Positions 29,136 through 52,790 of a DNA stretch of 64,000 nucleotides are shown here, piece after piece. Position 1 is the stretch's first letter. Each line of letters opens with the position of its first letter. The notes under the pieces were generated by a model, which saw only the letters and a list, made by a program, of their open reading frames with translations, was not told where the DNA came from and searched no databases. This stretch comes from Octopus bimaculoides (lineage: Eukaryota). The stretch spans positions 11,232,707 through 11,296,706 of the forward strand of contig NC_068984.1 of NCBI RefSeq assembly GCF_001194135.2, written 5' to 3'. Both the position numbers and the translations under genes were made by a program.

Positions 29136-29231
29136 CTACGTAAAGTAAGTACGAAGTACTCTGGCCTCTGCTTCCATTTCTTCCTTAGTTCTAAGCTTTA
29201 ATGTTTTGCCTTGAACAGGCTTTTCTTGCAG
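29136..29231 (-). CDS. NitFhit: NitFhit terminal exon ([31 protein letters not shown])
   Basis: tttgtttatag| acceptor. RTxEEMxAEAxxLRxYF is the Fhit C-terminal motif. TAG at 29138-29136. Confidence 0.94.
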   Translation of the reverse strand: MQEKPVQGKTLKLRTKEEMEAEARVLRTYFT

Positions 29232-32200
29232 CTATAAACAAAAAAAAATACACACATATACATCTCTGTGTAGAAATATATAACGCAAATTAAATATGAA
29301 CATTTATTTTCATTTCATGTAAAAAAAATTATATCATGCAATTTGAAAAGTTCAAGCAAATTGTAAAAGCAATTCTAATGATATATGTATGCAGGAGATA
29401 ATGGTCATGACTGTATGGATATGATATATCCTAGAAGATAAGGTACTGTGAATGGTGAACAACAAGGAAGAGTTTGAAGGAAAACCATGCCTTTGGACAT
29501 TAGACCTGACAGATGAGATGACATAATATACACTAACAACTACAGTATAGCTCAGTGGTTCTCAACCTTTTTTTGCTGAATCCCCTTTGACTCCCATTTT
29601 ATTTTACTGGATCCCTGTAACCATTTGAAGTTTTACAAAATCCCATTATATTTTTATAATTAAATATCATAAGGAACTGTATAAAAAAAATTAAAATATT
29701 TTGTGTATTGTTGAAGTATAACTAATTCATTGCATATTAACTAAATCTTATATAGGTACCCAAAGGTCATGAGAACCACTAGTATAGATGTAAGTGGAGG
29801 TGCAATGGTCCAGTGGTTAGGTCAGCGGATCACGGTTTCGTTTCCCAGACCGGGCATTGTGAGTGTTTATTGAGCAAAAACACCTGAAGCTCCACGAGGC
29901 TCCAGCAGGGGGCAGTGGTGAACCCTGTTTTACTCTTTCACTACAACTTTCTCTAACTCTTTCTTCCTGTTTTTTTGTTGTACCTGTATTTCAAAGGGCC
30001 AGCCTTGTAACACTGAATCTCCCTGAGAACTACCTTAAAGGTACACATGTCTGTGGAGTGGTCCGCCACTTGCACGTTAATTTCACGAGGAGGCTGTTCC
30101 GTTGATCGGATCAACTGAAACCCTCGTCGATGTAACCAACGGAGTGCCACGATAGATGCAAGCTTTGAGTGACCATTCTAGCTATCATCACCCAATAAAC
30201 AAAACAAAACAATCTTGTCATTTTCATTCTCTTGATTTTCTTTGTAACTTCATACTTTATCTAATGATATTAGCAATAAGTGAAACATGCTTCAACTTTA
30301 AATTAAATTCCAGTTTCAGTTCAGCATGAACTGAATTGGTGTTTGCCAGAATAAACACAGTGGATGATAAAGTAGTAGTAGTAGTAGAACTTTTAAAGTG
30401 CACACAAGTTATACAAAACCAATGCAAGAGCACTTGATTACTAGTAAATAACACAAATGTAAATTCTTCGGCTTAGATAAGAATGATGGCACAATATGCA
30501 TTGGTACACTGATAACAGAGTAGTGGCAAAAATGTAAACGGTAACTCCCATCTCAATTTCAGGTTAAGTTTATCAGAAACTGTACACTGAAGATGTGCTA
30601 TGCAGACAGGGATAGCAGATTTGTAAAAAGAACTACTTAAAACAGAGATAACAGAGATATTGTAATTGGCATTTGTTAAGGTCATATTACACAACTAGCA
30701 GTATCATAAGCTTCATCTTCAATTACACAAAAGGTAAGGTTTTCAGGTGTTTGAGTTGCAAATCTGAAATATTTCAATATTTACATCTGTCAACTGGAGA
30801 TGGAGTTTCATTTGGCTTTACTTTGATCAGGAACTCCAATTACACAAATGGTAAAGAAAACAAATAAGGAATGTAGTCCTTAATTCAAATTCTTGGTGTA
30901 TGTTTACACTGAGAACAGTTTAGAAATACAGAAATATTCTTCTGAGTTTGAGAACTGCAACAATCTGTGTCAGGGACGGATAGTTTCTTGATAATGTAAG
31001 TGGATGAATTATATTTTTTTTTAGAGGTGTGGTGGGTGGGGATGGCACTCCAAGACCAATGAAATCAATGTGGTTAATGTCTGAGTAATATGAAGATTAG
31101 TTACGCTGTGATAAAAGATGGTTTAGTGTAGAGATCTAGACTGTAACTTGCAAAGAGGTTCAATGTTAGACAACATAGCAGAAAAAAATATAAAGGAACA
31201 GGCCATAAAAAAAAACAACAAAACAGGCTTAAAAAGTATAGACAAAAAATAAGAATATATTTAGCCCAAATATTCTACCCGTTTTATGTTCAAATTAGTA
31301 AGATCTGGTCCTTCACACCAACCCTACAATGTCATTCTAAAAGTAAACAGTTACATGCCTGGTTAATTCAAAACAAAGTGAATAAATAATCATCAAATTT
31401 GAGCGAGTAATCCAAATGTTAAAGATTACACAAAACCCTGTAGGTCTCTAACTAAAAGAGAAGCAGACAACTGATCGAACTCAGCCGAAGTCTTGCACAA
31501 TTGTATGTGGAGCCATATTCTAAATAGAATGCAAACTGCTCTGCCAAACTTATCCAAGTTGTAATCCTCAAGACCCAAGTTCTTCCCACGTGTGTCAATT
31601 GAAGTGGCCAAAATGGCCACTTCAATTCAAAATGCAGCATTGAATTTATAAGAACCACAACAAATGGTTTATATGCCAGGATGAACATGTTAACTGGAAT
31701 GTATCTATCTATATAAAAATATTTACTCTCTGAGTGGTTGGCGTTAGGAAGGGCATCCAGCTGTAGAAACTCTGCCAAATTAGATTGGAGCCTGGTGTTG
31801 CCATCCGGTTTCACCAGTCCTCAGTCAAATCGTCCAACCCATGCTAGCATGGAAGGCGGACGTTAAACGATGATGATGATGATGATGATGAATACATGTC
31901 CAGAGCATTGCACTGTACTCTATGCAATTCATCACAGTATATCAGAGTGTGCAGTATGGTACTGAACACAGTGGACACATGCTATATATAGAATAACAGA
32001 TACATGGGTTATGCCAAGTTGTTTGACTGACTGTTTATTGTATTTCATAAGCCTGCTCAATCAGAACTGACCTTTAGTTATACAACAAACAAGTGCAGTG
32101 GGATCTCAAAAAGATTCATAGAAAACCAGGACTTTAGATTATACCATATCAATCAGAGAATTTAGATATAAGAACAGTTCACAAGTTGCAGTTAGTTTCT

Positions 32201-35200
32201 GTTATCAAGGTGACATAAGTATTGTGAAGATAAAGTAGACCAAACAAAGAAGTCCGGCAAGTTCTAAGTGCTGTTAGTAATGAACAATCTTGTTCATTTG
32301 TTAAGGATGGACCTGAAACCAATGATCTTCTTAATCATAAACCAATGCCTGTGCCATACAGAAATGAAAGAAGTATGATTTGGTTGATGTATAACATCAT
32401 CCTGCATGAAAATACATAGAAAAGGCAGCTGTATTAGTATCAAAAGGTGTGTATATGGAATGATAGTAGCACATTTGTCCTTGCAGATACAAAGGTACGA
32501 ATGTAAGGAAACATGAAGAACCAGGGAAAGCTGCTGAGATGCTTAAAATATCTAAAGTAGAACATGCGCAGTCAATTAGGAAGCACAAGGAAGGCACTAT
32601 CTACAATGACTGGTGGAGCAGTATCATTATCAACCTCTACAAGGAGAAAGGAAATGCTCTGGAAAGAGACAACTACAGATGCATCAAACTAATAAATTAC
32701 ATTATGACTGTTACTTAAAGCGTTTCTGTACAACTGATTAGGAAATGGATTGGTCTAGATGAGATGCAGTTCATGTTTGTGCCAAAAAGGGGTATCACTA
32801 ATGCCCTGGTGAGGAAACTACAGGAGAAGCATTCAGCAAACAATAAGTCACTCTATCTAGCTTTTGTCAATCTGGAGAATTCTTTTGGCTGGATTTGAAG
32901 CTTTATAGTCTGATAATCACTAAAAAACACTAGGTATAGACAGCTGGTTTGTGAAAACTGTACAAGACTTGTACAGATGTGGTGTCAGTAACTATCTTTC
33001 AGGACATACTTCTCAACATCCTTCTGTCTGTTGTAATCTTCCAAGCCATAACATAGCAGTGAAGGTGGACAGATGTTCCAAGGAAAATTGGACCCATACA
33101 CTCATGGAAAATTGGACATAAAAATGATGATAACAGCAGCATTGGAAATTGGAATATATAACCTCTACAATTGGGTCTCTCATGACTATTAGATTTTTTT
33201 GAGTCTCCATCTAACACTTACCGTCTCCCTTCTTCACTTTCTCGTCTGTCACTCACCTCCTTTTCTATCAATGCACCTCCCTATTATCACTATCTTTTTC
33301 CATCATGACACATGCAATGAGTGTTGGCAATGGATTTCATCTGTCCATATTTAAAATCCTACTCCTCATCACTCTTTCACTCATTGCTTTCTCCTCTATC
33401 ACTCACTGATCTCCATCACTCTCTCTCTCATACACATTGCTTCTCCCTCAGTCAGTTTTTCTCCCCATCAATTTCCCACTTCTACTACACCCTCTTACCT
33501 TTACCTCTCCCCATCACATCATTGTACTGTTTCTATTCAGTCTTCTTAACAACAATCGTCACACAGCTATCACTCCCTCATTTGCTTCCTTCCAGTATAT
33601 TCTATTCTATTATCCTATTTCCATCCAATAAGAAAGAAATAACTGTACAGAAGCAACACAGAAAGCACTCTGTTTAGTCTTGCTCTGAACAAGACAACAC
33701 TCTGGTGCTGGTAAACAAATGATTGGAGACATCATCGGATAGAGAAGATTCTCTAGTCTTGCCAAGGTCAAGATAACATCCCTACTGCTGGTGCCATGAT
33801 AAAGTGCATCGAATACACTCTCAAAAGTGATTGGGAATAGGAAGGGTATCTAAGCACAGAAACCATGACAAAAAAGAAAAACATGCAAATAAGAAATGGT
33901 CTCCAACCCCACTAAGAGGGCAGTAACTTTAATAAGAACTGACATGAGCTGTAACAACCCATAAAACCCATACTAGCATGAAAAAGTAGAAGTAAAAACC
34001 ATACCATATGTGCTGTGGTTTGTTGTGATGTTCCTATTGTTTTATGTAAGATGTGTGCGGTGCCTAGTAGTACTATTTTCTGTATGTTACATATATTTGT
34101 TAGTCTTGGTGTGTTTGTTATGCATTAGTCTGAATATTTTTTATCATCCCTAATCCGTCTGTTATGAAAGGAACTGTTTCTGTTTTTAGACTCCACATTC
34201 GAGTTACCTCTATTTCCAGATCTTTGTATTTTGAAAGTTTCTCCATTTCTTTTAGAGAAACGTTGTCATCTGCTGGTATTAATACATCAATTAGAAAGCA
34301 TTTGTTTTTCTTGATGATCTCTGACAACTATAACTGGCCTATTGACCTTAATTTCTCTATCTGTGTGTATTGGCATTATTATTATTATTATTATTATTAT
34401 AAGTAGTAATAAATATCTAAATACTCAGAGATAACAAAAGATTATCAATATTTACCTTTCTGTAAATGTCATCATTTTCTGAGAAATCACCAGCAAATCT
34501 TGGAATTACATGAACGTGAACATGCTGCAACAAATTTAACATATAAGTATAAATAATTTCTTTAGACATGAAAAAAACACATTGAACAATGCAGATAAAT
34601 CAAATTTAACCATTTCGCATTCAGATTACTCTGTCCAATGTAATGCTTATTAATTTACATTGTTTACGAATTAATTATGCATTATCTCACAGCTTCGAGA
34701 TTTCAATGATGTAATTGTTTATTGTTAGAATGACACTGTAGAATAAGTCTGAGAAGCCAGATCTAGCTGGTTTGAACATAAAACGGGCAGAAAGGTTAGG
34801 CTGGATATAGTTTGTTTAAATGCTAAAGGGTCAACAAAAAAATATATAATTATTTTCATTTTTTTCAACCAGTAAAAAAAAAAATTGCTCATAAGCTATA
34901 AAAGCATATTGGAATGAGACAGAGATCATCATTTAATGTTCACTTTTTCATGTTTGCACAGATCAGACAGAATTTGTTAAGGTAGATTTTCTATGGCCAA
35001 CTGCTCTTCTTGTCACTAACCCTCACCTGCTTACATGCAAGTTAGTATATCCTCTGGCCAGACATGTATTTTTTTTACAGAAGACTAAATCACTTATATC
35101 ACAGTAATGCTCATTTTAAATCATTATATGATGTCAAGACACAGGTACACATATACATCTAATTGTCAGCTCCTGTCCAACCCATGCCAGCATAGAAAGT

Positions 35201-38200
35201 GGACGTTAAATGATGAGGATGATGATTATATATATATATATATATATATAAGATGTCACTTAGGTATAGCAATACTAATAACATGGTGTTGGGACTCAAT
35301 ATACATATGCTTCACAATAAAGTATTAGTTGCATATTGAGCATACTAAGAAATTGCATAAATGACAAGAAAACAGGAATTATGCAACCAACTTCCTTAGC
35401 TTACAGTTGTTTCTGCTATAAGATACAGTGCGCTCAGAGATAAGTGCAGATGCTTCACCTTATAGCAGAAATAGATGTAAGTTAATGACATCAATTACAT
35501 TATTCCTGTTACCTCGTCATTTATTTAATTTATTATTACATTCACTCCCCCTCTCTTTCACATACACACAATGGGTTTCTTTTAGATTCCGTCTACCAAA
35601 ACCACTAACAAAGCTTTTGGTTGGCCCAGGGCTTTAGGAGAAGATATTGTACAGCAATACTCAACCAGAAACTATTTGGTTGAGAAGCATGTTTCTTAAC
35701 CACATAGCCATGCCTGTACATGGAGGGTAAAGTTTATAATGCAACTTCCTGAATGAGGCACTTTTCTTTAAAAATCCTTGTTGTTTAGCACTAGCTTGGC
35801 TTTGACAGATCAGACCATCAAAGGCATTCCAGCAACCACTATTTCAGACAGATTATTATAAACAGCATTATCCACAGCATGTCACCATCTCACCTTTTAT
35901 CACAGTCCTTCATTTCATCACTCACCATAGTCTTTCATTACTCACCATGGTCTTCTATCACTTGTCACACACAAGTTGAGAAAAACCAGGACTAGGTGTA
36001 TTTCATTACACCACTATCACAGGTCTACAACTAGACTGAAAAGTTAACTATCATCACTATGGTTTAATGTCCACTTTTCCATGCTTGCATGGATCAGGCA
36101 GAATTTGTTGAGGCAGTTTTTTCTACAGTTAGATGCTCTTCCTGTTGCCAACTCTTATCTATTTCCAAGCAAGGTAATATTTCCCCATGGTCAAACATGC
36201 TTTTCAAGGCAGACTGGAAACAAACAACATAGCTTATATGATGATGAGGATGATGATGATGTTTGCTTACAATCATCACATTATGTCATAACAAGGATGC
36301 ACACAAACACTGTATCATGTGCTATTACTTGCTGAAACCATATTTCCTTCATACATTCCAATCTTTGATATGGTTCCTCCAAGTAGATACCATTGTTATT
36401 ACCAACCACTTTATAGTATGTACTGGATGCATTTTATTGTGCTACCGACACTAGAGAACTTGTATGATAGAATCCACTCGATGAGATATGTTAAATAAAA
36501 TTAAAAAATTTAAAAACCAATTACTCTTACCTTAACACTTTGTCCTGCTTCTAGGCCATCTTGAATAGCAAAAGTCAGAGAAGTTCCATTAAAATGTTTC
36601 TTGACTACATCACCGACTTTGCGTGCTGTACACCATAAATCAGATGTATGCTCATCGCTTACCTCAGAGAAACTAGAAACAACTGGTTTTGGACAAATTA
36701 AAACATCTTCAGTAAAAGTTAAGAAAATAACTTGAACATTGGAACAGAAATTAAAGCAGGTTAGCCATATGCCAGTTAGATGTATGAGAAGTAGAGGTTT
36801 CATACTAAAGTAACTGGTTCATGTGACATCAGGGAACCTGTGAGACACATGTCTAGGGGATAGAGGTATCGAATCTCCTCCATGGCCCTTGACAAGTACT
36901 GCCATCCTGAGCTGAGCTGGGCATAATGGTGACTAAGGGGTAACTCTGTACTCCGCTTGTCTTTCACAGGACTAAATCATTAAAAATTTGTAGTGGTTAC
37001 AATAACAAGATAAAAGAAAATAGACAAGCAATTATTTACAATAAAGGATACGTCCAGGTAATACAGGTTTGATGTTGACAAATGCAAAAGAAAATGGTGT
37101 ATTAAGAAACACTTGTGTTGAAGGAATATCAATGTGACCAAATTTATATGTTTCCTGTTCATCTACAGTGGTATTTTCTAGTGAAAAACAAAAGGAAATT
37201 TAAGATTATTTCAGTCAACTTATGAAAAACAACCTCATTTACCACGAAAACCTGGCCATTTCTGCCATTTCATTAATTTGTCCTAACATCATAACAACCT
37301 CCGCCTACAATACATTTATTATATTTTAGCTTTTACTTGTTTCATCCATTGGACTGTGGCCATGCTGGGGCACCACCTTGAAAGGTTTTAGTCAAACAAA
37401 TTGATCCCAGGACATATCTTAAACTTGGTACTCATGCTATTTGTCTTTTTGCTGAAACACTAAGTTACAAGAATATAAACAAACCAACATCGGTTCTTGA
37501 ATGGTGGGGATGGGTGACAAACAGACACATCTATACACGCAGACACACACACACAATTGGCTTTCACACAGCTTCCATCTCCCAAAACTCACTTACAAAT
37601 CATTGGTTAACTCAGGATTATAGTAGAAGACACTTGTCCAAGGTCTCATGCTTTGGAACTGAATCTGATACTACACAGTCACAAAGCAAGCTTCTTCATT
37701 ACACAGCCATGCCTGTATTCAGTGACACTTTTTATTTTTGCAATTTTATGGCCATTTCCTCCCCTGGCTTGGATAGGGATACAAACCCAAACATTTCCAT
37801 GAAATAAATTTTTGAAATATTTTTTTTTCTTTTTTCATTGAAACTAAATGCATTTACTGTGATCAAAAGGTTGTTTAAACTGAAGCACATTGAATAAGGT
37901 ACCATAGTAAGCAAGACAACAGTTACAAAAATTTGAAGATACAATACTGACACAAAATTGCACTCTATTGTTTTTATGATTTTGGACAGGCCATTATTCT
38001 ATGTACTTCATCATCATTTAACAGCCATTTTCCATGCTGACATGTGTTGGATGGTTTGACAGGAGCCAAGAAGCCAACAGACTGTACCAAGCCCCAGACG
38101 TCTGCTTTGGTATGGTTTCTACAGCTGGATGCTGTTCCTAATGCAAGCCTCTTTGCAAAGTATAGTGGGTGTTTTTTCATGGCACCAGCACTAGCAAGAT

Positions 38201-40102
38201 CACCACAAGACAAGACACCTCACTCAACTGAAGGTGGGATGAGGGTTTAGTATTGAGGGAGGTGGCTTTCTGCCAGGTGATGAGAGGTTAGAGTATGTTA
38301 GAAAGACAGAAACAGGTGTCTTGCAGTAGAAGGGGTACATGGCTATTCCAGTTGGAAAAACAGAGAAGATGATGAAGGGGTATCAGGAAACACCCTCTAT
38401 ACATATTTAGCTACAAGGAACAGGTACCAGATCATACAGTAAAGTTACCTGTGAATGTTACCTATCCACAAGAAGATTTATTTTCTTCATCCCTTGCATG
38501 CCATACAACTGAAAGTGAGCACTGTCTCACAGAGAGGAAAAAAATAAGAAAAGGTAAAAAGAAAACAAAATCTGAGGTATAGGTTGTTGTCATCATCGTT
38601 GCAGCAGTGTCGGAATTGTACACTGGTTAAGCTTATAGTTGTAACTCTATCTACACTATGGCCCAGGTTGTGAGGTTATCAATCAAATCAACCTGATTGA
38701 ATATACAGTAATCCCTCACCTATCGCGCATTCAGTACATCGTGGATTTTTCTGGTTAATATATGTAAATTTATACTGCGGACTCCTCAGTATATCTGGGT
38801 TTCTGTGGCTGATAGCTATTTATATTTTTATAGATTTTAATTATTTCTGTGGAAGGTTTTGGGATGTAAAATCCACGATAGTTGAAGGATTACTGTGCAA
38901 CACTAGGATTGTCCTTGAGTAGTTGTTCTAGTGTCAATGTTGGTATACACTCACTGTGGTGCAAGGAAGGTCAGGGTTCAAGATGTGAGAGAAGCCTGAG
39001 AAAAGAAAGGCATATAGAGAGAAAGAGAGATTAGAAAAGGTAGAAAGAAAAGATGAGAGAGAGAAGAGAGAGAAAGAGTCAAAAGAGAGGAAAAAGATAA
39101 AGAGGAGAAAATATAAGTAGAGAGGGGGAGTGCAAGGGGAAGCAATCAAGAAACAAGAGAGATTTTTTTTCTACTCTAGGCACAAGGCTCGAAATTTTTG
39201 TGGAGGTGGGTGCGGGCAGTGATTAGATCGACCCCAGTACACAACTGGTACTTAATTCATCAACCCCGTAAGGATGAAAGGCAAAGTCAACCTCGGCAGA
39301 ATTTGAACTCAGAACATAACGACAGGCAAAATACCACTAAGCATTTCAACTGGCATGCTAACGATTCTGCCAGCTCACCGCTGGTGATATTAACAATCAT
39401 CATCATTTTATCATCCGCTTCTCCATGTTAACATGGGATAGATTGAATTTGTTGAGGCAGATTTTCTACAGATGGATGCCCTTCCTACCACTAACCCTCA
39501 CCTGCTTCCAACAAAGGTAATATTTGGCCCTGAACAGACATGTTTCCATTGAAGATGGGAAACAAAGGATGTTGCTTGTCTGATATTGATGCTCATGTAT
39601 AACTATCACGTGATACCAAGGCAAGAAGATACTATTACCACACCACACATACATACAGATATACATGAGTTTCTTTCAGTTTCCATCTACCAAATCCACT
39701 CACAAAGCTTTAGTTGGCACAAGACTATAATAGAAGACACTTGCCAAAGGTGCCTTGCAATGGGACAGAACCCAAGACCAATGATTTGGAAGAGGCTTCT
39801 TAACCACATAGCTACCCCGATGAGATTGATGCCTTTTTCCACATTATTCTTCCTCTCAGATTTATTTTAATGCATCTGTTGAAACATATGTCGGTGATAT
39901 GGTGATATAAATGATTTAAACAACATCTTGAGTGTTTGTCTCCATTTTCCATTATTCTTATGTTCTGCAAAACAAGTCTCACTTCTCAGAATTAACTCCC
40001 ACGCAAGTGTGATTACTAATTCCTTAGGCGCTTATGTGACATTTGGGTACCTTGTAATTATTCTTCTTGATCTTTCCTTGTAAACTGAACATTTATATAC
40101 AT

Positions 40103-40163
<61 letters not shown>

Positions 40164-43100
40164 CACCATCACCATTTAACATCAATTTTCCATGCTGGCA
40201 TGGGTTGGACAGTTTGACAGGAGTTGGTAAGGCATGACTTCTATGGTTGGAGATATATATATATATAAATACACACATACACAAACTTCTTTCAGTTTCC
40301 ATCTCCCAAATCGACTCACAAGACTTTGGTCAGCCTAAAGTTATAGTAAAAGACACTTGCCCAAGGTGCCACAGACTGGGATTGAACCTGAAACTATGCA
40401 CCCAGTATAATCTAGAGAGGGGCTTGTGTTAGAATGGCTTCCAGCAGTAGAAACTATGTTGAAATAGAACATACAACATGTGGTCCTCTGGCCTATTTAG
40501 TAGTGCATTCATCATCATCATCATCATCGTTTAATGTCCATTTTCCATGTTGGCATGGGTTGGACAGTTTGACTGAGGTCTGGAGAGCCAGTGGCTGCAC
40601 CAGGCTCCAAGACTATGATAACCCTTCCAACCATGCCACCACAGAAAGCAGACATAAAATGATGACAATTAGTGATGACAGTAATGGAACGATGAGACAG
40701 AACTGTTCCTCAGACAATTTGGCAAAGATAAAAATTCTTACCAGTGGAGAAAGAATATATTTGATTGTAGAGGTCATTACGTCTGTGGTGCCAAACAGGC
40801 ATCTCTAATCGGACATCATGTAATAAATCCATATTGATTTCTGCAGTACATAGCCCTATTCCTTTACTACATTCAGCAATAATGCTTCCCCATGGATCAA
40901 TTACCTGTTGAAAATATGGAGATGTACAAAAATATCACATGACAGTGAGTGCAGAAAAGAATAGGCTTTGAGATTAAAAAATGATGAAGTTATGGAACCC
41001 CGCCTGCCATATGTATGCACACATGCATATCATGACTCATATATAGATCACTTTCCTGATATTTGTACATAATTCTATGCACTGTACATGCACCTTTGAT
41101 AAATTGTAGTGCACCTGAGCACTATAAACAATAATTTCATTATTATGTAGTTTATGAAAGATAAAATGAGTAATATAGGTGGTATGAAGAAGAGTGATGA
41201 CTGGAAGAGGTGGGTTCAAACAGAAGTGGAATGCAGTTAACAAGTCAGTGATGCTGAATAGCGAAAAACAGAAGAAAGTGGGGTGGGTGGGTGCATAATA
41301 TAACAAAGTCTTCTTTTTCTTTTTTTTTTTGTCCACTATAGGTTGATGAATCAGTTAACTCGATGGATTCCTTTTGAATATCTGACACCTTTCAATATAT
41401 TAATAATAGCATACAATTAATCAAAACTGTGCCATTCCAATTCTACCAAAGACATTTTCTAGACAAAGCTAAGAAATAGATTGTTTTGAAAGAGTGGAAC
41501 TCTAAGTTGATAAAGCTACAAATTATCATCAACGTCATCATCTGGTCAAGTTTGCTTGACCATTTTTAACCCATGCATGCTTTCCATCTCAATCCATCAT
41601 TAGTTGAGGGAGGTCTCTGGAGAGGCATCTAGTGTTTATTGTGAGTTGACCTACATAGGTTGTGTTCAGACAACCTGCTCGAGTACGGCCATGCTTTGGC
41701 ATCCATAGCAGTAGATCTCTTGCCAGCAATGTCCTGCAAAGTGCAAGTGCCTTTCCCTTATAATGATGGAAATAGGCAGAAGGTTTTCATACAAAAAGCT
41801 ATAAGTAATAGCATGTAAATATAATAAATAAAAAATAAATATCGCCCTTTTAAAGCCTATCCAGGCTCATGGGCCCAGTTTCCCGGTTTCTATGGTGTAT
41901 GTGTTCCCCCCAGCTGGACGGGACGCCAGTCCATCGCAGCATTACTCAAGGAACAGGAAGAAAGAGTGAGAGAAAGTTGGGGTGAAAGAGTGCAACAGGG
42001 GTCACCACCACCCCCTGCCAGAGCCTCGTGGAGCTTTAGGTGTTTTCGCTCAATAAACACACACAACGCCCAGTCTGGGAATCGAAACCGCGATCCTCCG
42101 ACCACGAGTCCGCTGCCCTAACCACTGGGCCATTGCACCTCCACAGCATGTAAATATAGGGCTACAAAACACTTGGGTAGAAAACTTTGAAGGCTGCTTG
42201 TAAATATAACAGATATTCTAGCATGGACAGCCTTTGATTTCTTTTTATCAAAAAGGATTTTTAAACCAATATTTAAACACTGTCATTCATAGCTTTATCT
42301 ACTTCAAATCCCACCAGTAAAAATGAATTATTTCACGTTTCTTGAAGTTTCTAAATTTTTATGATGTAAACAATGTGTGTGTGTGTGTTGTAAATAAGTG
42401 AGTAGCATGATGGAGAAAAAAAATAACCAGATCAAGGAATTACTGCAGTGTTTTAAAGTCTCTTTATCCCTTTTAAAATAATATTGCCCAAGATATATTT
42501 TCTGATCTGTGGCAAAATGTCCTTAACAAATCAGCCATTTCACTAAGAGATGGTGCCATGCCCATGCTGGTGCCACATAAAAAAGCACCCATGCTGGGGC
42601 CACATATAAAACACCCAAGCTGGTGCCATGTAAAAAGCATCCAATATACTCTATAAAGTGGTTGATGTTAGGAAAGGCATCCAGTCATAGAACCCTTGCC
42701 AAAACAGACAGTTGGAACCTGGTGCAGCTCTCCGTCTGGCCAGCTACTGTAAAATCACCAGCATGGAAAACACCTTAAATGATGATGATGATACAAAATA
42801 CAAAATGGCAGTATATGACTGTAATTATAGAAATACTTTTTTTGCATCTTTTTCTCACCATTGCATGTCCATACGATGAGCGTTTCTTATTATGTCGGCC
42901 AACTTGTGCAGCTGCTATAACATAGCACTGGCTTTCAATGGCACGGCTCCGAAGTAATGACTGGAAATATAAGCAAAACATATTACAGAATACAGTATGT
43001 AGATATATATTCAGACACACACATACAAGGTACAGCAGAAAAATCTGCGGATCTTTTTTAAAACAGGGGCCACATTTTTCATTAATGTTTTACGTAGTGT

Positions 43101-46100
43101 TTTTGGTACCGAAAGGCTTTCAAACTTCGTATACTTATCTATTTTGTGTTATAGAACAGAAAAATATTTTTGTATTCGAATTTATTTCATGTAAAAAATT
43201 GTCTTATTTCGATAATTTCAACCAATCACTGACAAGTATTCAGTTGTTTACATTTACTCCTTTGGCTGATTAAGCGGTGTAAAGCGTATTTAATTTCCAT
43301 AGCTTCGTTTTGCTTTTTTCTTTTTAAATTTGCTGTTTTACCCTAACCCTAACCCTATCACCGATAGAATTGTTTCAGAATCATTTGTTTATGTAGTCGG
43401 CACTTATTGTATATCGGCTGAATGGACGTCAGTGATTGGTTGAAATTACAGAAATACGACAACTTTAACATGGAATAACTTAGGGATTTCTTTTTTTTTT
43501 AAGAAGACTAAAAGAAAAAGATGTTTTATATGACACATTCTACCAGTGTTCCAAGTTTCAAAGTGTTTCGTTAATGAAAAATGTGGCCCCCGTTTTAAAA
43601 ATGATCCAAATCTGCTGTTGAACATTTATCAAGAATGGTAACTCTGGGAGACTTTTTTGCTCCATACCCTGAATACACACATACAAAGCAATAAAAAAAA
43701 ATTTAGAATACAAAATTTCTGAAAGTGGACGGCAAGAACAAGAATAATGTGTTCCAAAGAAAAGAAAATGCATTACAATTACATTGTAACTTTATTTACA
43801 TCTGCCCTCTCCTAGCATATAACCACCTCCCTCAATAGTGCACCCCAATTGTCAAGGGGTTTTAGTCTTGCAAGCTGCAAAGTGACCTCACTAGTGCTGG
43901 TGCCACAAAAAAAAATGCATCAAGCACTCTCTGTAAAGTGGTCGGCATTATGAAGGGCAACTGTGAGGCTGGAGGAACCAGATGGCTAGATAATGAACAG
44001 TCATAGGAACCAAGTGAAGCAAACACTGGAGTATGATGCAGTCCTCAGACCCACCAAATGTTATCAAAACATACAAATCATGCCAGCATGGAAGACAGGT
44101 GTTAAATGAGAGTATAAAATCTTAGGTAAGGTGAGTTAAATGCTGAGAAACAACAACTCAGCCCTTCAGAAATATACAAAATTTAAGATCTGAGTAAATT
44201 GAGCCTTACATGTTCAATTATTGATTCTCATTAGTCACCTTGTTTCAGTTTTGGTTGTACTAAGATCAGATATATTTTTTCTTTTGTCTGATACAACTTC
44301 AATGTTACAAATTACAAGGAGTCTCTCCAACAAAAAAACAAAAAACTGAAGGACGCCTGTTTTCTACTCTTTGATATAATGTTGAGCTATTTCAGTAGCT
44401 TTTGGGAGAAACTGAATAGAGCTGTGCAAGCCAAAAAATAGTTTTTTATCAATGAAATTGCTGGCATTGTTAAGTCCACTTCACAACATTTATCCCTTTA
44501 TACCTCCGACAAATGTCTTCTAATACAAGCACAGGTGAACCCAAAACTTATGAATGAAATTGAATAGACAGAATCAGTGTGGAAGCCTACTGAGTAGAGT
44601 GCACCTGTCCTTGAGTAGCAGACATAAGCTCTTGTCTTGTTTAACATCACTCCTTGGGACTTGTGTGATTTTAGTGAAGTCCACTCTGTTGTAGGCATTC
44701 AGACAAGGTCCCTTGTCTGAGGAAAACTCAACATTTTGATGAACTGCTTCCTACTTTAGTAACCACAAGTTAGGGCTCTATGCTTCTTTTCTCCCACCAG
44801 TCTCCAAAAGTCCTACCAAAGTCCTCTCACTAAGTCACATTTTTAACGATTTTAATTTCACAAAAATTTTACAGAACAAAGCAGTGAATTACAGCACCTT
44901 GGCAATGTTTTCTACCTTCTTTAACCCTTTTGATACCAGTCCACCTACAACCACACCTGATTCTATGATACAAACATCCTGTTTTAAAGTGATCTAAATT
45001 AAAACCATCCTTTAAAAATTTATGTTCCAAACAACAGATTAATAACGACAAAGTTATTTGACTAAATTCTTTATTATTTTCAAAATGAATTGAAACAAAG
45101 GCAGCGTATTCTAACAGAAATAAGGTAAGAAAAGGGTTAATGATGCTTACTTCCCAATGAGCAATACCAGTTGGTTCCATGAAAGCAGAAGGATAAGTTA
45201 ATAATTCTGCACCTTGTCTGGCCAAAATCAAAGCTAATTCTGGGAAACGTAAATCATAACACTCAAAAGAATCAAGGAAAAATAGAATTAGAATTAGTTT
45301 AGGGTCTTGAGGTTCATCATCATCCTTTAACCATTTAACATTTAAAATGGCCATATCCAGCCCAAATATTCTATCAATTTTATGTTCAAACTAGTCAAAT
45401 CTGGCTTCTCATACCCACCCTACAAGGCCATTCTGAAAATAAACAAAGACACATTGAAATCTTTAAACTACAAGATAATGCATAATTAATTCAAAACAAT
45501 GTGAATAAATAAGCATTACATTTGATAAAGTCCACTTTCCATTTTGGCATGGGTTGCACGGTTTGACAGAACCGGGAGAGCAACAGGGCTGCATCAAGCT
45601 CCAATGTCAGTTTTGGAACGGCTTCTATGGCTGGATGTCGTTCCTAATGCCAACCACTTTACAGTGGGTACCGAGTGTTTTGCTCAAGCACTGACTCTTT
45701 CAACAAAATCAAGAAATCATGAATTTTATTATTTTTATTTTTATCTATGTTAGTATAGGTGGAGCGGGTTTCTACCTGCGTACATTTGTACACTGCTAGA
45801 ATAACCGTATTTACTCCACTTACTACACTAACCACTCAGCACATAGCAACATTACTTCTAAGGCGACAAGTATCTGTTATTATGTATATTTACCTAGTGA
45901 TTCATTACTACTTCGGTAAGTACGGTAACGGCTATCACAAGGTTCTAAGGTTAAACTATATATATATCCAGAGTTGTCTCCCATGCTAGCTGAAAGAGTC
46001 AATACAACGTTAGTTCTTAAATGTATTTTCCCTTTTACTCTTTTACTTGTTTCAGTCATTTGACTGCAGCCATGCTGGAGCACCGCCTTTAGTCGAACAA

Positions 46101-49100
46101 ATCGACCCCAGGACTTATTCTTTGTACGCCTAGTACTTATTCTATAGGTTTCTTTTGCCGAACCACTAGGTTACGGGGACGTAAACACACCAGCATCGGT
46201 TGTCAAGCGATGTTGGGGGGACAAACACACAAACATATACACACACACACACACACACACANNNNNNNNNNNNNNNNNNNNNNNNNNNNNNNNNNNNNNN
46301 NNNNNNNNNNNNNNNNNNNNNNNNNNNNNNNNNNNNNNNNNNNNNNNNNNNNNNNNNNNNNNNNNNNNNNNNNNNNNNNNNNNNNNNNNNNNNNNNNNNN
46401 NNNTATATATATATATATATATATATATATGACGGGCTTCTTTCAGTTTCCGTCTACCAAATCCACTCACATGGCTTTGATCGGCCCAAGGCTATAGTAG
46501 AAGACACTTGCCCAAGGGGCCACGCAGTGGGACTGAACCCGGAACCATGTGGTTCGTAAGCAAGCTACTTACCACACAGCCACTCCTACGCCTTGCTAAA
46601 TATATTTTTTTTTAGTTCAGCTTTTTAATGATGCTATTTATACGACAGTGACACATGTTGAAAACTATTGCACAATGTCCAAACAAAATGACAAACACAC
46701 ACACACACATCTACGCGTATGATAAACTTCTGTTTCTGCAAATCAAATCCACTCAAAAAGTGTTGGTCAGCCCAAACCTATTGTAGAAGTCACCCAAGAC
46801 GTTGCACAGTAGGACTAAACCAGAAACCACTATGCATGCTGTATGCATACGTCTGTTACATGTGTGCATGTGCATGCACAGGTACATGCACGTGCATGCA
46901 CAGGTATGTGCATGTGTGAAAGCATGCATTAACACTGCTTGGGTAGCAATATACTTTTTATGTCCTACACAAGCCACAAGTGATGCAGTTTGTCAGTTCA
47001 GTATTCAATGATCAGCGGAACAAAAGTGCAGGGTGGTGGAAATATCACAAAGGGGTCTGAAATAATTTGTTTCTGAGTGTGTTTATATATGAGTACACAT
47101 ATTGACCGCATATATCACAGAGCCTCTCAAAACTAGAGACCATTAATTATTACCCAAGTTTAATAAGTCAAATCACCATGAACCAAAAAACAAGTTCAAC
47201 CCATCAGCAGCTGCCTAACAGATATCATTATACTTTCAACAGCAAAAGGATACAATCCCTAAGCCAACTTTTCCAACAGGTGTCACTACAGGGGGTTTAA
47301 TACATTTGCCAGGTGTTGTATAATCACTCTCATGTAAACTCAAGCCTTTGATGTCTGCATCAAACATATGGATTTTTTCATAGGTTGTAACAACATGGCC
47401 ATCACTGTTGATAATAATATGTGTATTTTTCACAAATTGGTCCGTGTTCTGAAAGTAAAAATGATAAATCTGATAATGTCAAGTTTGTCTTCGTTTCTAC
47501 AAAACAGCAAAAAGGAATTGGAAAGGAATTGAACATAATAAATGGCAAACTCAAGTAAGAAAAAAAAAAGAAAAAAAAAGCCATATGAAGAAAGCTTATC
47601 AAGTCATGCCAAAACCATGAACAGTTGTAGTCGCTATGACTGACTGCAAATAATTATTACTGTTATCACATAGTCAGGGAGAACGAATGACCCTTTATTG
47701 GTTCTTTAAAACTGGTGGCCATGAAGAAGGTATCCTCAAACCAGACAGTGCTTTCAATAGAGCAAACTATTGCCAGATTGGATTGGAGCCTGGTGCAGCC
47801 TTCTGGCTCACCAGCCCTCAATCAAACCGTCAAACCCATGCCAGCATGGAAAGTGGACGTTAAACGACGATGATGACGAAACTCTGCTCAAGGCACCCAA
47901 AGACCAGGTGATGGTGATAAATGGAGTACGCAGGCCATAATAGGATTTGAACTCAGAATCAAGAGAGCTGAAACACATACTGCAAAGAACCTACCTGGTT
48001 TAACACTCAACAATTCCACCAATCCACTACCCTAGACTGGTACTTCACTTACTGACCCATAGACGGATGAAAGACAAAGTTGACCTCTTCAGCATTTGAA
48101 CATAAAATGCAAGGAACCAGAATACAAATCAATTCATCCAATGTTCTAACCATTCTGACTGATTTAGTTCCAACTTAGAATCCATCTATCCATGCAATGC
48201 CTACCTGCACGCATATATACCATAATGCATATCTTCATTTGCACATGCACATATGCATTTGCACATACATGTATGATGTATGTTTTCATTCATACATACA
48301 TGCATACATAATGCATGCATATATGTATTCATTCATTCTTTCTCTCTTTCACTCTCAGAAAATTAACAAAATCTAAAACCCAATGATAGATTGATTACTT
48401 TAATGAAGCCGTTTGCAAAATTCTATTTAAATATCTAATGATACCAGTACAATCATCATCATCAACGTTTAACGTCCGCTTTCCATGCTAGCATGGGTTG
48501 GACGATTTAACTGATCCAGATGGCTACACAAGGCTCCAATCTGATCTGGCAATGTTTCTGCAGTTGGATGCCCTTCCTAATGCCAATCACTCCGAGAGTG
48601 TAGTGGGTGCTTTTACATGCCACCGGCACGAAGGCCAGTCAGGCGGTACTGGCAACGGCCACACTCAAAATGATGTATTTTACGTGCCACCTGCACAGGA
48701 GCCAGTCCAGCGGCACTGGCAATGATCTCGCTCAAATGACTTTTCACAAGCCACCGGCACAAGTGCCAGGAAGGTGACGCTAGTAACGATCACACTGGAA
48801 CAGTGGTGCCGTCACGATTTCGCTTTCGCTCGCAAGCCGAGTTTAGTTCCAATGAAGGAGATGTTGGCATGGGGGCCAGTCACCGAATTTAGTTCGATTT
48901 CGATTTCACTTGCCTCAACAGGTCTTCGCAAGCGGAATTTAGTGTCCAATGAAGGAAGGTACACATAAGTAGGCTGGCTACATCCCTGGCAGAGGCCTTG
49001 GGTTTTGGTCTCACTTAGCTTGCCGGGTCTTCTAGGAACAAGATTACTGATGTCATGGTTTTGATTTCAAATCTCATGACAGTTTATCACATTTCAAACA

Positions 49101-50506
49101 CCAAGCTGATCAGTTAATGTTCTGGCTTATTTACCTAAAGAATTGACAGTTTCTATCCTATTATTAAGTCCTTTATAAAGACACCTTAGGTAATTTAGTC
49201 AAAGAGCATTCTATGATACTGCAAACTAATAGCAGGTATAAACATTTTAACAAAAGTATAATTTTAATTTAAGAAAAGAGAAAAGAAATAACGAGCAAAT
49301 ATATACGTACTTTTTGATGAAATCCACCCAACGACAACCATATTTGTAGTTCTTTAGCAACACCCTTGTATTTAGATACTAAATGACCATCAAGACTCTC
49401 AGATTGTTCCAAAGACTGCTTTATGGATTCTCCAATATAATCAAAACATTCTGGTAAAAATACCATCTGAAATATCAAGAAATATTAAATCAATCAATCA
49501 AAACTTATGTGGGTTAACGAGTTAGAAGGCTTCAGCAGGTTAAATATTTTGTCTCTCATCAGTTATTCTGAAAGTTCAGCATTTTAAAGTTCATACCTAG
49601 TTGTTAATCTACATATCATCATCATCATCATTCGATGTGCACTTTTCCATGCTTGCATGGATTGGAAGGAATTTGAGACAGGTACTCTTCCAGTTGCCAA
49701 CACTCACCTGTTTCCAAGCAGGGTAATATTTTCCCAAGGGCAGACATGTTCTCATGGTGTATTGGAAATGAATGACACTGCTTGTATGACAGTGATACTC
49801 ATTTACAATTATCACAAGACAAGGAAAGACACACAAATACATACATACATATATACATACGTACGCACGTATGTACATGCCAGTGGCATGTAAAAAGCAC
49901 CCGCTACACTCTCAGAGTGCTTGGTGTCAGGGCATCCAGCTGTAGAAACCTTACCAGATCAGATTGGAACTTGGTGCAGCCTTCTGGCTTGCCAGTTCTC
50001 AGTCAAACTGTCCAACCTGCGCCAGCATAGAAAGCGGACATTAAACAATGACAATGGTGATGGCTTCTTTCAGTTTCCATCTACAAAATTCACTCACAAG
50101 GCATCAGTCAGTTTGGAGCTGTAGTAGAAGGCATTTGCCCAAGGTATCACACAATGGGACTGAGCAACTAAACCCAAAACCATCAAGTCACAAAGTGAAC
50201 TTCTCAATCCCACAGCTATGCCTGCACCTACTTTGTTCTTTAGCCATTGGAGAAGAAAAGCAACTGTGGTTTTAAGACATCTATATTCAAATAGTTACAT
50301 AATGCTTTCATACACCTACCTGTACTCCTTGAGATTTGGCCTTCTCAATAAGCGATCTGCAAACAGAAAAGTTCTCTTCTTTATCCGCAGACGATGTTAA
50401 CTGGCACACAGCTATACGTGGGTGTTGTTTACCAACTTTTTCCACAATGCTAGACATCTTGCGTAAATGATGTCTACACCCAGTTGAAGCAGTACGGACA
50501 ACTAAC
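29136..50506 (-). CDS. NitFhit: NitFhit fusion protein (Nit1-type deaminated-glutathione amidase domain + Fhit dinucleoside-triphosphate hydrolase domain); complement(join(29136..29231,34456..34524,36531..36706,37052..37177,40742..40904,42859..42960,45151..45261,47254..47448,49311..49466,50320..50506)); first exon not firmly located
   Basis: Ten exons give one continuous stop-free frame with matching phases. The nitrilase triad E (FLPECF), K (YEKIH) and C (CYDLRFPE) and the HIT motif HVHVH are present. Length is about 443 aa from the Met at 50457. Confidence 0.95.
29553..29781. mobile_element. hAT (Charlie-like) MITE
   Basis: TIRs cagtggttctca / tgagaaccacta. 8-bp TSD gtatagct / gtatagat. 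Confidence 0.85.
29794..30149 (+). mobile_element. tRNA-derived SINE, head D + tail X
   Basis: Head gtggaggtgcaatggtccagtggttagg and tail ctgtggagtggtccgccacttgcacgttaatttcacg. Near-identical to 62909-63230. Confidence 0.85.
31255..31430. mobile_element. piggyBac-like MITE family F, partial
   Basis: cccaaatattctacccgttttatgttcaaa...ccctacaatgtcattctaaaa is shared with 34606-34834 and 45327-45530. Confidence 0.65.
31728..31890 (+). repeat. Family C repeat with (GAT)n tail
   Basis: gagtggttggcgttaggaagggcatccagctgtag...gcggacgttaaacgatgatgat. Confidence 0.85.
32390..33200 (+). mobile_element. LINE RT remnant
   Basis: Degenerate RT N-terminal motifs ([24 protein letters not shown]). Confidence 0.65.
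33990..34375 (-). mobile_element. Non-LTR retrotransposon remnant with restriction-like endonuclease (RLE) domain
   Basis: NRP..V..., [42 protein letters not shown] is a PD-(D/E)xK RLE signature. Confidence 0.8.
34456..34524 (-). CDS. NitFhit: NitFhit exon with histidine triad ([23 protein letters not shown])
   Basis: ttgttgcag| and |gtaaat. The HxHxH HIT motif and NDxIY are present. Confidence 0.96.
34606..34834. mobile_element. piggyBac-like MITE family F
   Basis: Ends ttaaccattt... and ...taaagggtcaa (degenerate TTAA-CCC / GGG-TTAA). Confidence 0.7.
36531..36706 (-). CDS. NitFhit: NitFhit exon, Fhit core ([10 protein letters not shown]...[18 protein letters not shown])
   Basis: 58 full codons after the split His codon. 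The QDGxEAGQ motif is present, donor gtaaga. Confidence 0.95.
36707..37051 (-). other. U12-type (minor spliceosome) GT-AG intron in the Fhit domain
   Basis: 5' splice site GTATCCTTT (37051-37043). Branch-like TTTTCTTAAC (36727-36718) lies about 11 nt from the exon. The intron is 345 nt. Confidence 0.88.
37052..37177 (-). CDS. NitFhit: NitFhit exon, linker and start of Fhit domain ([43 protein letters not shown])
   Basis: ttttcactag| with phase-1 entry matching the Nit exon. [13 protein letters not shown] resembles FHIT SFALVNRKPVVPG. It ends at the U12 donor GTATCCTTT. Confidence 0.94.
37990..38335 (-). repeat. Family C repeat, long copy
   Basis: ttccatgctgacatgtgttgga...ctacagctggatgc core. 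Confidence 0.7.
38705..38897. mobile_element. Tigger-like MITE
   Basis: TIRs tacagtaatccctc / gaaggattactgtg. Confidence 0.7.
39170..39385 (-). mobile_element. SINE family A
   Basis: ggatgaaaggcaaagtcaacctcggcagaatttgaactcagaac (reverse complement of the core). Confidence 0.8.
40742..40904 (-). CDS. NitFhit: NitFhit exon, end of Nit domain ([54 protein letters not shown])
   Basis: ttcaacag| acceptor. There is no stop after RRNDLY, and the exon ends at a phase-1 donor G|gtaaga. Confidence 0.94.
41824..42144 (-). mobile_element. tRNA-derived SINE, head D + tail Y, young insertion
   Basis: Perfect 14-bp TSD agcatgtaaatata (41810-41823 and 42145-42158). The head matches 62909 and the tail is gcgatggactggcgtcccgtccag. 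Confidence 0.88.
42859..42960 (-). CDS. NitFhit: NitFhit exon ([34 protein letters not shown])
   Basis: tttccag| and |gtgaga. It follows the Nit1 pattern LLRARAIETQCYVVAAAQ. Confidence 0.96.
43020..43680. mobile_element. Non-autonomous TIR DNA element containing a (CCCTAA)n motif
   Basis: Inverted subterminal repeats tttaaaacaggggccacatttttcattaa (~43060) and ttaatgaaaaatgtggcccccgttttaaaa (~43575). Confidence 0.55.
44921..45140. mobile_element. piggyBac-like MITE
   Basis: TTAA-CCCTTT...AAAGGG-TTAA ends (TTAA target duplication). Confidence 0.85.
45151..45261 (-). CDS. NitFhit: NitFhit exon with catalytic Cys ([37 protein letters not shown])
   Basis: 37 codons carrying the CYDLRFPE nucleophile motif, donor gtaagc. 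Confidence 0.96.
45327..45530. mobile_element. piggyBac-like MITE family F
   Basis: It starts tttaaccatttaacattt and matches 34606-34834 in the opposite orientation. Confidence 0.7.
46040..46590 (-). mobile_element. SINE family B (gcttcccaacc...ccttgggcaagtgtcttc head, CA/TA microsatellite middle, cagtcaaatgactgaaacaag tail), interrupted by a gap
   Basis: The same structure occurs at 5220-5510 (+) and 37330-37715 (-). Head-only copies lie at ~39660-39820, 40270-40400, 50060-50225, 51930-52050, 53460-53620 and 55305-55440. Confidence 0.8.
46262..46403. other. Assembly gap (N run)
   Basis: Run of N between (CA)n and (TA)n. Confidence 0.99.
47254..47448 (-). CDS. NitFhit: NitFhit exon with catalytic Lys ([30 protein letters not shown]...[10 protein letters not shown])
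   Basis: actttcag| acceptor, 65 codons, ending at the U12-type donor GTATCCTTT. Confidence 0.95.
48455..48990 (-). repeat. Family C repeat, long copy with internal subrepeats
   Basis: (ATC)n end, with repeated tttacgtgccaccggcac-like units. Confidence 0.8.
49311..49466 (-). CDS. NitFhit: NitFhit exon with catalytic Glu ([12 protein letters not shown]...[11 protein letters not shown])
   Basis: tttcag| and |gtacgt, 52 codons. FLPExFD and WLSLGGFH are Nit1 motifs. Confidence 0.95.
50320..50506 (-). CDS. NitFhit: NitFhit exon: presequence-like segment, internal Met and Nit N-terminus ([62 protein letters not shown])
   Basis: tttcag| acceptor and |gtaggt donor. IAVCQLTS resembles the Nit1 VAVCQVTS motif. 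Confidence 0.92.
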
Positions 50507-52047: not shown

Positions 52048-52057
52048 NNNNNNNNNN
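52048..52057. other. Assembly gap (N run)
   Basis: 10 N next to (GT)n. Confidence 0.99.
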
Positions 52058-52319: not shown

Positions 52320-52790
52320 ATGTGTGGGGTTTGCAACAGAAAGGGCATCCAGTCATAGAAAAATTGCCTCAACATACTCTTGTCTGACCCATGCAAGCAT
52401 GGAAAAGTAGGCATTAAAACAATGATGATGATAGTGAGGCATGCACATAAAAAGCACCCTTCGAACTTTGGGCCTCATGGAGGCAGTGACAAATGACGGA
52501 GACCTATGGCAATTTACCATGCTTGAGGAGACCTGCCAAGCCAAGTAAGATCACAGCTGTGGCCAATGCCAGTGATTTGTAACGGACACCTGTGCTGGCA
52601 GCACATAAAAATCACTCGCTATACTCTTGGAGTGGTTGGCATTAGGAAGGACATCCGGCTGTAGAAACCTTGCCAAATCAGATTGGAACCTGGTGCAACT
52701 CGCCATCTTGCCAGCTCCTGTCAAACCATCCAACCCATGCCAGCATGGAAAACAGACATTAAATGATGATGATGATGGTGATGTTTGTAC
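52320..52790 (+). repeat. Family C repeats (two adjacent segments)
   Basis: gagtggttggcattaggaaggacatccggctgtag...taaatgatgatgatgat. Confidence 0.75.

What the first reader, a model, noticed from the sequence alone, without database searches (positions are those of the whole stretch)
29136..50506. Single-ORF Nit1-Fhit fusion gene (NitFhit) in a mollusc-like genome
Seen: the last Nit exon (40904-40742) has no stop after RRNDLY and ends at a phase-1 donor. The next exon (37177-37052) enters in phase 1 and runs through a short linker ([14 protein letters not shown]) straight into Fhit (YKFG...[14 protein letters not shown]). That exon has no in-frame ATG, so Fhit cannot start on its own there. 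The E-K-C triad and HVHVH are both intact. Known: vertebrates and yeast have separate NIT1 and FHIT genes, while Drosophila and C. elegans have the fused 'Rosetta stone' NitFhit. Nit1 repairs deaminated glutathione, and Fhit cleaves Ap3A-type dinucleotides. Inference: a lophotrochozoan fusion suggests the fusion predates the ecdysozoan-lophotrochozoan split, or arose repeatedly, and couples two metabolite-repair activities in one oligomer.
Basis: partly seen in the sequence, partly recalled or inferred. Interest (0 to 1): 0.82.

Follow-up and report, generated by a model that had tools for sequence, protein, structure and literature searches.

The report
Octopus NitFhit fusion gene, already annotated
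This is the ordinary, already annotated Octopus bimaculoides gene that makes one protein from a Nit1-type amidase and an Fhit nucleotide hydrolase, and a published survey has already reported this fusion across protostome animals, so it is real but not new.

Summary
On the minus strand, 11 exons with canonical GT-AG splice sites (50665 to 29136) rebuild exactly a 470-aa RefSeq protein of Octopus bimaculoides, XP_052822841.1. The last Nit exon (40904-40742) has no stop and ends at a phase-1 donor. The next exon (37177-37052) enters in phase 1 and runs through a short linker into Fhit. The Fhit part has no Met before residue 458. The Glu-Lys-Cys triad and HVHVHV are intact. The assembly gap (46262-46403) lies inside intron 3, between microsatellites. 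The flanking exons join as GLGI|CYDL, which aligns without a gap to worm NitFhit and to five other species.

The interpretation also holds. Pfam finds CN_hydrolase plus HIT, and the best solved structure is C. elegans NitFhit (E 2e-129).

It is not novel. UniProt already names this protein NitFhit. Fused orthologues are annotated in molluscs, brachiopods, annelids, nemerteans, arthropods, priapulids and nematodes. A 2023 preprint already places the fusion at the base of Protostomia.

My one addition: the phase-1 linker intron is shared by octopus, sea hare, oyster, Lingula, Capitella and a scorpion. That favours a single origin over repeated fusion.

The parts
50634..50665 (-). Alternative first coding exon of isoform X2. 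It encodes MMVLSAATWN plus 2 nt of a Trp codon, with a phase-2 GT donor.
50320..50506 (-). Coding exon 2. It encodes a basic N-terminal extension ([16 protein letters not shown]), then the internal ATG at 50457 that starts isoform X3 (MSSIVEK...), then the start of the Nit domain.
49311..49466 (-). Nit exon carrying the catalytic Glu (FLPECFD).
47254..47448 (-). Nit exon carrying the catalytic Lys (YEKIHMFD). It ends ...VGLGI in phase 0.
46262..46403 (.). Assembly gap inside intron 3, flanked by (CA)n and (TA)n microsatellites. It interrupts no coding sequence.
45151..45261 (-). Nit exon carrying the catalytic Cys (CYDLRFPE).
42859..42960 (-). Nit exon ([34 protein letters not shown]).
40742..40904 (-). 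Last Nit exon. It has no stop codon and a phase-1 GT donor after ...[14 protein letters not shown].
37178..40741 (-). Linker intron (3564 nt, phase 1). A phase-1 intron sits in the same short, variable linker stretch in five other protostomes.
37052..37177 (-). Exon encoding the second half of the linker and the start of Fhit ([15 protein letters not shown]...KPVLPG). Phase 1 in and out, no ATG.
36531..36706 (-). Fhit exon ((H)VLICPKP...[13 protein letters not shown]).
34456..34524 (-). Fhit exon with the histidine triad ([23 protein letters not shown]).
29136..29231 (-). Last exon ([31 protein letters not shown]). The TAG stop is at 29138-29136.

Best explanation
This is the single-copy NitFhit gene of Octopus bimaculoides. 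Eleven coding exons spread over about 21.5 kb are spliced into one mRNA, which encodes a 443-472 aa polypeptide depending on isoform.

The N-terminal part is a Nit1-type carbon-nitrogen hydrolase with a Glu-Lys-Cys triad. By orthology to NIT1 it should act as a deaminated-glutathione amidase. An ~19-residue linker joins it to a C-terminal Fhit-type HIT domain with an HVHVHV motif, which should hydrolyse Ap3A-type dinucleoside polyphosphates.

The join is made by splicing. The last Nit exon has no stop codon and ends at a phase-1 donor. It is spliced to the exon that matches the first coding exon of a free-standing Fhit gene.

Shown here: the exon structure, the open frame, the domain identities, the catalytic motifs and the conservation of the architecture.

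Inferred: both enzyme activities. Also inferred is a worm-like assembly with a Nit tetramer core carrying Fhit dimers, which I recall from the 1EMS literature. The N-terminal extension of isoforms X1 and X2 has several Arg, Lys and His residues and no acidic ones. I infer that it is a mitochondrial presequence and that isoform X3, which starts at the internal ATG, is cytosolic.
For: All 11 exons have GT-AG sites and reproduce RefSeq XP_052822841.1 exactly.

Pfam finds CN_hydrolase over residues 14-266 (E 2.9e-69) and HIT over 309-399 (E 1.9e-25) of the 412-aa partial protein.

C. elegans NitFhit 1EMS aligns across both domains at E 2.3e-129. Human FHIT 1FHI aligns from its residue 3 to the octopus YKFG motif.

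The Fhit part has no Met before residue 458, and no ATG lies in frame upstream of exon 37177-37052.

The same fused architecture is annotated in O. sinensis, O. vulgaris, Argonauta and Acanthosepion, and in dozens of protostomes.

Intronless contigs of about 1.7 kb, the size of a transcript, come from four sequencing runs. Each carries a continuous fused 447-aa ORF that is 81% identical to cuttlefish NitFhit.

Intron positions, including the phase-1 linker intron, are shared across six species from four phyla.
Against: No RNA read from this octopus locus could be inspected. The 40742/37177 junction therefore rests on the gene model, on conservation and on transcript-like contigs from a related cephalopod.

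Neither enzyme activity was assayed. The assignment to Nit1 rather than Nit2 rests on similarity to worm NitFhit and on the RefSeq name. Among free-standing PDB entries the margin is small: yeast Nit2 scores 191.6 bits and mouse Nit2 scores 176.4 bits.
Confidence: 0.95

Rival explanations
1. Two adjacent but separate genes, Nit1 and Fhit, have been wrongly joined by gene prediction and by the first reader.
For: No transcript from this locus was examined here. The intron between the two halves is fairly long at 3564 nt.
Against: The last Nit exon has no stop before its donor. The Fhit exons have no Met before residue 458, and the frame upstream of the first Fhit exon closes without an ATG. The two phase-1 boundaries match. 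The same join, with a phase-1 intron in the same linker stretch, occurs in five other species. Intronless transcript-like contigs carry the fused ORF in a related cephalopod. No genuine free-standing Fhit from a protostome appeared. The two candidates were fragments of fused genes.
Confidence: 0.02
2. The fused protein is the main product, but the locus also makes a Nit-only protein by retaining intron 6 or by polyadenylating inside it. This would not exclude the best explanation.
For: Reading through the donor at 40742 adds only 11 codons ([11 protein letters not shown]) before a stop. Intron 6 holds four AATAAA hexamers.
Against: Four AATAAA hexamers are barely above the 2.4 expected from shuffled sequence of the same composition. 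None of the three RefSeq isoforms of this species is Nit-only. No data here bear on the question directly.
Confidence: 0.1
3. The apparent continuity of the gene is an artefact of the assembly gap at 46262-46403, for example a missing exon or a mis-join of two loci.
For: A gap of estimated length lies inside the gene.
Against: The gap is intronic and flanked by microsatellites. The exons on either side join in phase 0 into a sequence that aligns without a gap to worm NitFhit. All six species have an intron at this same position.
Confidence: 0.01

Closest known systems
C. elegans NitFhit (PDB 1EMS) and D. melanogaster NitFhit, the original 'Rosetta stone' fusion proteins
   Same: The domain order is the same, Nit then Fhit, in one polypeptide. 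The worm protein aligns end to end (E 2.3e-129, residues 14-412 against 16-411). The Glu-Lys-Cys motifs and the HxHxHx motif are conserved.
   Different: The linker differs in sequence and is 3 residues longer than in the worm in the alignment. The octopus gene has alternative first exons that add a basic N-terminal extension. The gene is spread over 21.5 kb and has 10 introns.
Annotated NitFhit orthologues of other molluscs and lophotrochozoans (Octopus sinensis, O. vulgaris, Argonauta hians, Acanthosepion, Aplysia, Saccostrea, Lingula, Capitella)
   Same: They are 52-100% identical over the full length. Intron positions and phases are almost all shared, including the phase-1 linker intron.
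   Different: Differences are lineage-specific only. Capitella has lost one intron, and the linker varies in length by a few residues.
Free-standing vertebrate NIT1 (deaminated glutathione amidase) and FHIT (bis(5'-adenosyl)-triphosphatase)
   Same: Each half is homologous to one of these. Human FHIT 1FHI aligns at E 3.7e-38 from its residue 3. RefSeq names the octopus protein after NIT1.
   Different: In vertebrates, and also in cnidarians, plants and fungi, Fhit is a separate protein of about 150 aa with its own start codon. In the octopus the start codon is replaced by a splice acceptor and a linker.

Membership tests
NitFhit fusion protein | N-terminal carbon-nitrogen hydrolase (Nit) domain | tested here: met
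   Pfam CN_hydrolase matches at E 2.9e-69, covering profile positions 1-255 of 256.
NitFhit fusion protein | Catalytic Glu-Lys-Cys triad of the nitrilase superfamily | tested here: met
   The motifs [15 protein letters not shown] and [10 protein letters not shown] are present at P0001 positions 76, 148 and 189. They align to the same motifs in worm NitFhit. That these are the catalytic residues comes from established knowledge of the superfamily.
NitFhit fusion protein | C-terminal HIT domain of the Fhit branch, with the HxHxHx motif | tested here: met
   Pfam HIT matches at E 1.9e-25. HVHVHV is at residue 417. The best free-standing structures are Fhit proteins, 9UCH at 1.2e-38 and 1FHI at 3.7e-38.
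NitFhit fusion protein | Both domains in one open reading frame of one gene | tested here: met
   Eleven GT-AG exons give an uninterrupted 1413-nt CDS identical to XP_052822841.1. The last Nit exon has no stop, and the Fhit part has no start codon.
NitFhit fusion protein | A mature mRNA spans both domains | tested here: inconclusive
   No reads from this locus were available. A related decapodiform cephalopod has intronless 1.7-kb contigs carrying the fused ORF.
NitFhit fusion protein | Ap3A hydrolase activity and Nit1-type amidase activity | not testable with these tools
   This needs enzyme assays on recombinant protein.
Nit1 (deaminated glutathione amidase) rather than Nit2 (omega-amidase) | Closer to Nit1 orthologues than to Nit2 orthologues | tested here: inconclusive
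   The best match is the Nit domain of worm NitFhit. Among free-standing PDB entries, yeast 'NIT2' 4H5U scores 191.6 bits. From memory of Peracchi et al. 2017, that protein is the yeast dGSH amidase. Mouse Nit2 2W1V scores 176.4 bits and yeast Nit3 1F89 scores 175.6 bits. The order fits Nit1 but the margin is small, and I built no phylogeny.

The most novel reading that the evidence does not exclude
The phase-1 intron in the Nit/Fhit linker may be the scar of a single fusion event in the protostome stem lineage. In that event the last Nit1 coding exon lost its stop and became spliced to the pre-existing acceptor of the first coding exon of a downstream Fhit gene. Octopus, sea hare, oyster, Lingula, Capitella and a scorpion all keep this intron. 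It lies 9-13 residues after the end of the Nit domain and 7-9 residues before the Fhit Y-x-F-G motif. A second, related possibility is that the alternative first exons send the whole bifunctional enzyme to either mitochondria or cytosol.
Probability: 0.6. Interest if true: 0.25.

Novelty: already known. Interest (0 to 1): 0.1.

Why it matters
It matters little as a discovery. The gene is in RefSeq, UniProt names it NitFhit, and a 2023 preprint has already reported the fusion's presence in Lophotrochozoa and its origin at the base of Protostomia.

The finding does show that the first-stage reader can rebuild a split eukaryotic gene correctly from raw sequence.

The intron comparison adds a small piece of evidence that the fusion arose once, by exon joining, rather than repeatedly.

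Tried and rejected
- **Isoform X1 first exon.** I looked for MTFAVFFTHRLTR by exact peptide search and by sensitive tblastn. It is not in the window. It must lie beyond base 64000 or in the 10-N gap at 52048-52057.
- **Pekarsky et al. 1998.** I tried to read it for the fly and worm gene structures. It is not held under the DOI or under the PMC id I guessed, so the fly and worm introns could not be compared directly. A scorpion stood in for Ecdysozoa.
- **Genomic loci not on record.** Look-ups for Priapulus, Gryllus and Montipora failed.
- **Nematostella Fhit.** The gene model is intronless, so it says nothing about whether the Fhit introns predate the fusion.
- **Fhit-only protein search.** It did not list the fused proteins, not even the query's own protein. 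This is probably a limit of the word index. I used it only to show that free-standing Fhit exists outside protostomes, not for counting.
- **Two 'free-standing' protostome Fhit hits.** The Biomphalaria protein has no start Met and is 99% identical to residues 329-485 of the fused protein. The Dicrocoelium protein begins with the tail of the Nit domain. Both are fragments of fused genes.
- **Unnamed intronless NitFhit clade from metagenomes.** I tried to place it taxonomically, but no names or accessions are attached.
- **Not run.** I did not predict a structure, because a solved homologue at E 1e-129 makes it unnecessary.

Full report
**1. The observation.** I read both cited exons on the minus strand and translated them.

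- Exon 40904-40742 follows the acceptor TTTTCAACAG. It encodes [54 protein letters not shown], has no stop, and ends ACT G|GTAAGA, a phase-1 donor.
- Exon 37177-37052 follows TTTTTCACTAG. Its first two bases complete a GAA codon. It reads [42 protein letters not shown], contains no ATG, and ends GGA C|GTATCC, again phase 1.
- The reading frame upstream of this exon closes with stop codons within nine codons and has no ATG.
- The whole Fhit part has no methionine until residue 458 of 470. These exons therefore cannot produce an independent Fhit protein.

**2. The gap.** The program's warning concerned Ns at 46262-46403.

- The gap lies in intron 3 (47253-45262). A (CA)n run sits on one side and a (TA)n run on the other, which is a typical cause of an assembly break.
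- The exons on either side (47448-47254 and 45261-45151) join in phase 0 to give ...PVGKVGLGI|[10 protein letters not shown]....
- That stretch aligns residue for residue, with no gap, to C. elegans NitFhit.
- An intron sits at exactly this position and phase in all six species I compared.

Nothing coding is missing.

**3. The full gene.** I first assembled nine exons by eye and confirmed canonical GT-AG sites.

- A protein search returned a 470-aa protein that is 100% identical: XP_052822841.1, 'deaminated glutathione amidase isoform X2 [Octopus bimaculoides]'.
- An exact spliced mapper then rebuilt that protein from 11 exons between 50665 and 29136. The CDS is 1413 nt and the introns run from 127 to 5224 nt.
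Isoform X2 starts in a small upstream exon at 50665-50634.
- Isoform X3 (443 aa) starts at the internal ATG at 50457.
- Isoform X1 uses a different first exon, MTFAVFFTHRLTR. Related N-termini occur in O. vulgaris and Argonauta. This exon is not present in the window.
- The X1 and X2 extensions contain several Arg, Lys and His residues and no acidic ones. I infer, without a test, that they are mitochondrial presequences and that X3 is the cytosolic form.

**4. What it is.**

- Pfam finds CN_hydrolase (E 2.9e-69, full profile length) followed by HIT (E 1.9e-25).
- The best solved structure is the C. elegans Nit-Fhit fusion protein 1EMS, at E 2.3e-129. The alignment runs across both domains and the linker.
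- The best free-standing matches are yeast and mouse Nit proteins for the first half and human FHIT for the second half.
- Human FHIT aligns from its residue 3 to the octopus YKFG motif. The octopus Fhit domain therefore begins where a free-standing Fhit begins, and the linker replaces the start codon.
- The triad motifs ([25 protein letters not shown]) and the histidine triad (HVHVHV) are intact.

**5. Is the fused mRNA real?** I could not inspect octopus RNA reads. The indirect evidence is strong.

- The fused model is annotated independently in O. bimaculoides, O. sinensis, O. vulgaris, Argonauta hians and Acanthosepion pharaonis.
- A 447-aa fused ORF, 81% identical to the cuttlefish protein, sits uninterrupted on 1.7-kb contigs assembled from at least four sequencing runs. 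In total 16 such contigs were found. A 1344-nt ORF without introns on a contig of that size has the form of a transcript.
- One question stays open: whether a minor Nit-only product also exists. Reading through the 40742 donor adds 11 codons and a stop. Intron 6 has four AATAAA hexamers, against 2.4 expected by chance. That is not evidence either way.

**6. Comparison across animals.**

- All named proteins among the best 120 hits carry both domains and come from protostomes. They include molluscs, a brachiopod, annelids, nemerteans, chelicerates, insects, a crustacean, a myriapod, a sea spider, a priapulid and nematodes.
- A search with the Fhit part alone listed free-standing Fhit proteins of about 150 aa from vertebrates, cnidarians, plants, algae, fungi and oomycetes.
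- The two apparently free-standing protostome proteins are fragments of fused genes.
- I mapped exact exon structures for Lingula, Aplysia, Capitella, Centruroides and Saccostrea and placed the introns on one alignment.
- Nearly all introns coincide in position and phase. Capitella lacks one Nit intron, the scorpion has one Fhit intron shifted, and one Saccostrea junction could not be resolved.
- All six species have a phase-1 intron in the variable linker. It lies 9-13 residues after the conserved D-L/I-Y/F at the end of Nit and 7-9 residues before the Y-x-F-G motif of Fhit.
- A shared intron at the join in both Lophotrochozoa and an ecdysozoan favours a single origin. It is consistent with an origin by splicing the last Nit1 exon onto the first coding exon of Fhit. 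That mechanism is my inference.

**7. The finding is real and correctly read, but already known. Interest is low.

**8. Limits.** There are no transcript data for this locus and no enzyme assays. I built no Nit1/Nit2 phylogeny. The fly and worm gene structures were not available, so a scorpion stood in for Ecdysozoa. Invertebrate deuterostomes were not sampled.

Noticed in passing
L010 8965-10395; L012 1603-3015; L013 1331-2743 (proteins P0070, P0091 and about 20 relatives): A large unnamed clade of intronless fused NitFhit genes (about 470 aa, 50-53% identical to octopus) sits on metagenome contigs of 2-11 kb from JGI, ENA and Logan. The contigs are gene-poor, and one carries a reverse-transcriptase ORF, so they look eukaryotic. 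The closest named relatives are annelids and Lingula, at about 54%. No taxonomy could be attached.
   Followed up: partly
window 17753-18040 (+): An open frame reads ...EEIYSVELHRGTRGFGFSIRGGREFNNMPLYVLRIADGGTADLDSNLR and has a weak partial PDZ match (E 0.0044, below the Pfam cut-off). It is probably one exon of a neighbouring PDZ-domain gene on the plus strand.
   Followed up: partly
window 8943-9188 (-): An ORF fragment, MTDLSDFQRGQIVGARMAGTSVMKTAEIFGVSRSTVSKVMTAFEKEGK, has helix-turn-helix matches (HTH_28 at 6.6e-08). It looks like the N-terminus of a Tc1/mariner-type transposase remnant. That identification is from memory.
   Followed up: partly
window 58609-59663 (+), 54515-54805 (-), 34121-34327 (-), 14062-14310 (-), 19437-19859 (+): Several open frames look like decayed retroelement pieces. 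They include a Lys/Glu-rich frame containing a C-x-x-x-x-x-x-x-H-x-x-x-x-C stretch at 59096-59428, and a PHD-like frame at 19437-19859 (weak PHD match, E 0.0013). Most have no Pfam match. The piece at 34121-34327 lies inside intron 9 of NitFhit.
   Followed up: partly
window 46440-46560 (+) and 55340-55363 (-); similar translated motifs in several NitFhit introns (e.g. 40496-40612, 49612-49700, 52609-52857): A repeat element with the core GGGACTGAACCCGGAACCATGTGG occurs twice within 3 mismatches, against 0 expected. Translations such as ...[17 protein letters not shown]... recur in many introns on both strands. This suggests a dispersed short interspersed repeat family. One copy abuts the assembly gap.
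   Followed up: partly
window 7904-8316 and 52048-52057: There are two further assembly gaps outside the finding. The 10-N gap at 52048-52057 lies upstream of the NitFhit first exons. It could hide the missing first exon of isoform X1.
   Followed up: no
L009 (Saccostrea cucullata NitFhit, P0027) around residues 354-355: The annotated oyster protein reads KPVFGAYVLV where all the others have KPVLPGHVLV. No GT-AG or GC-AG junction reproduces it. This is probably a mis-predicted splice site in that gene model. It removes the conserved His.
   Followed up: no
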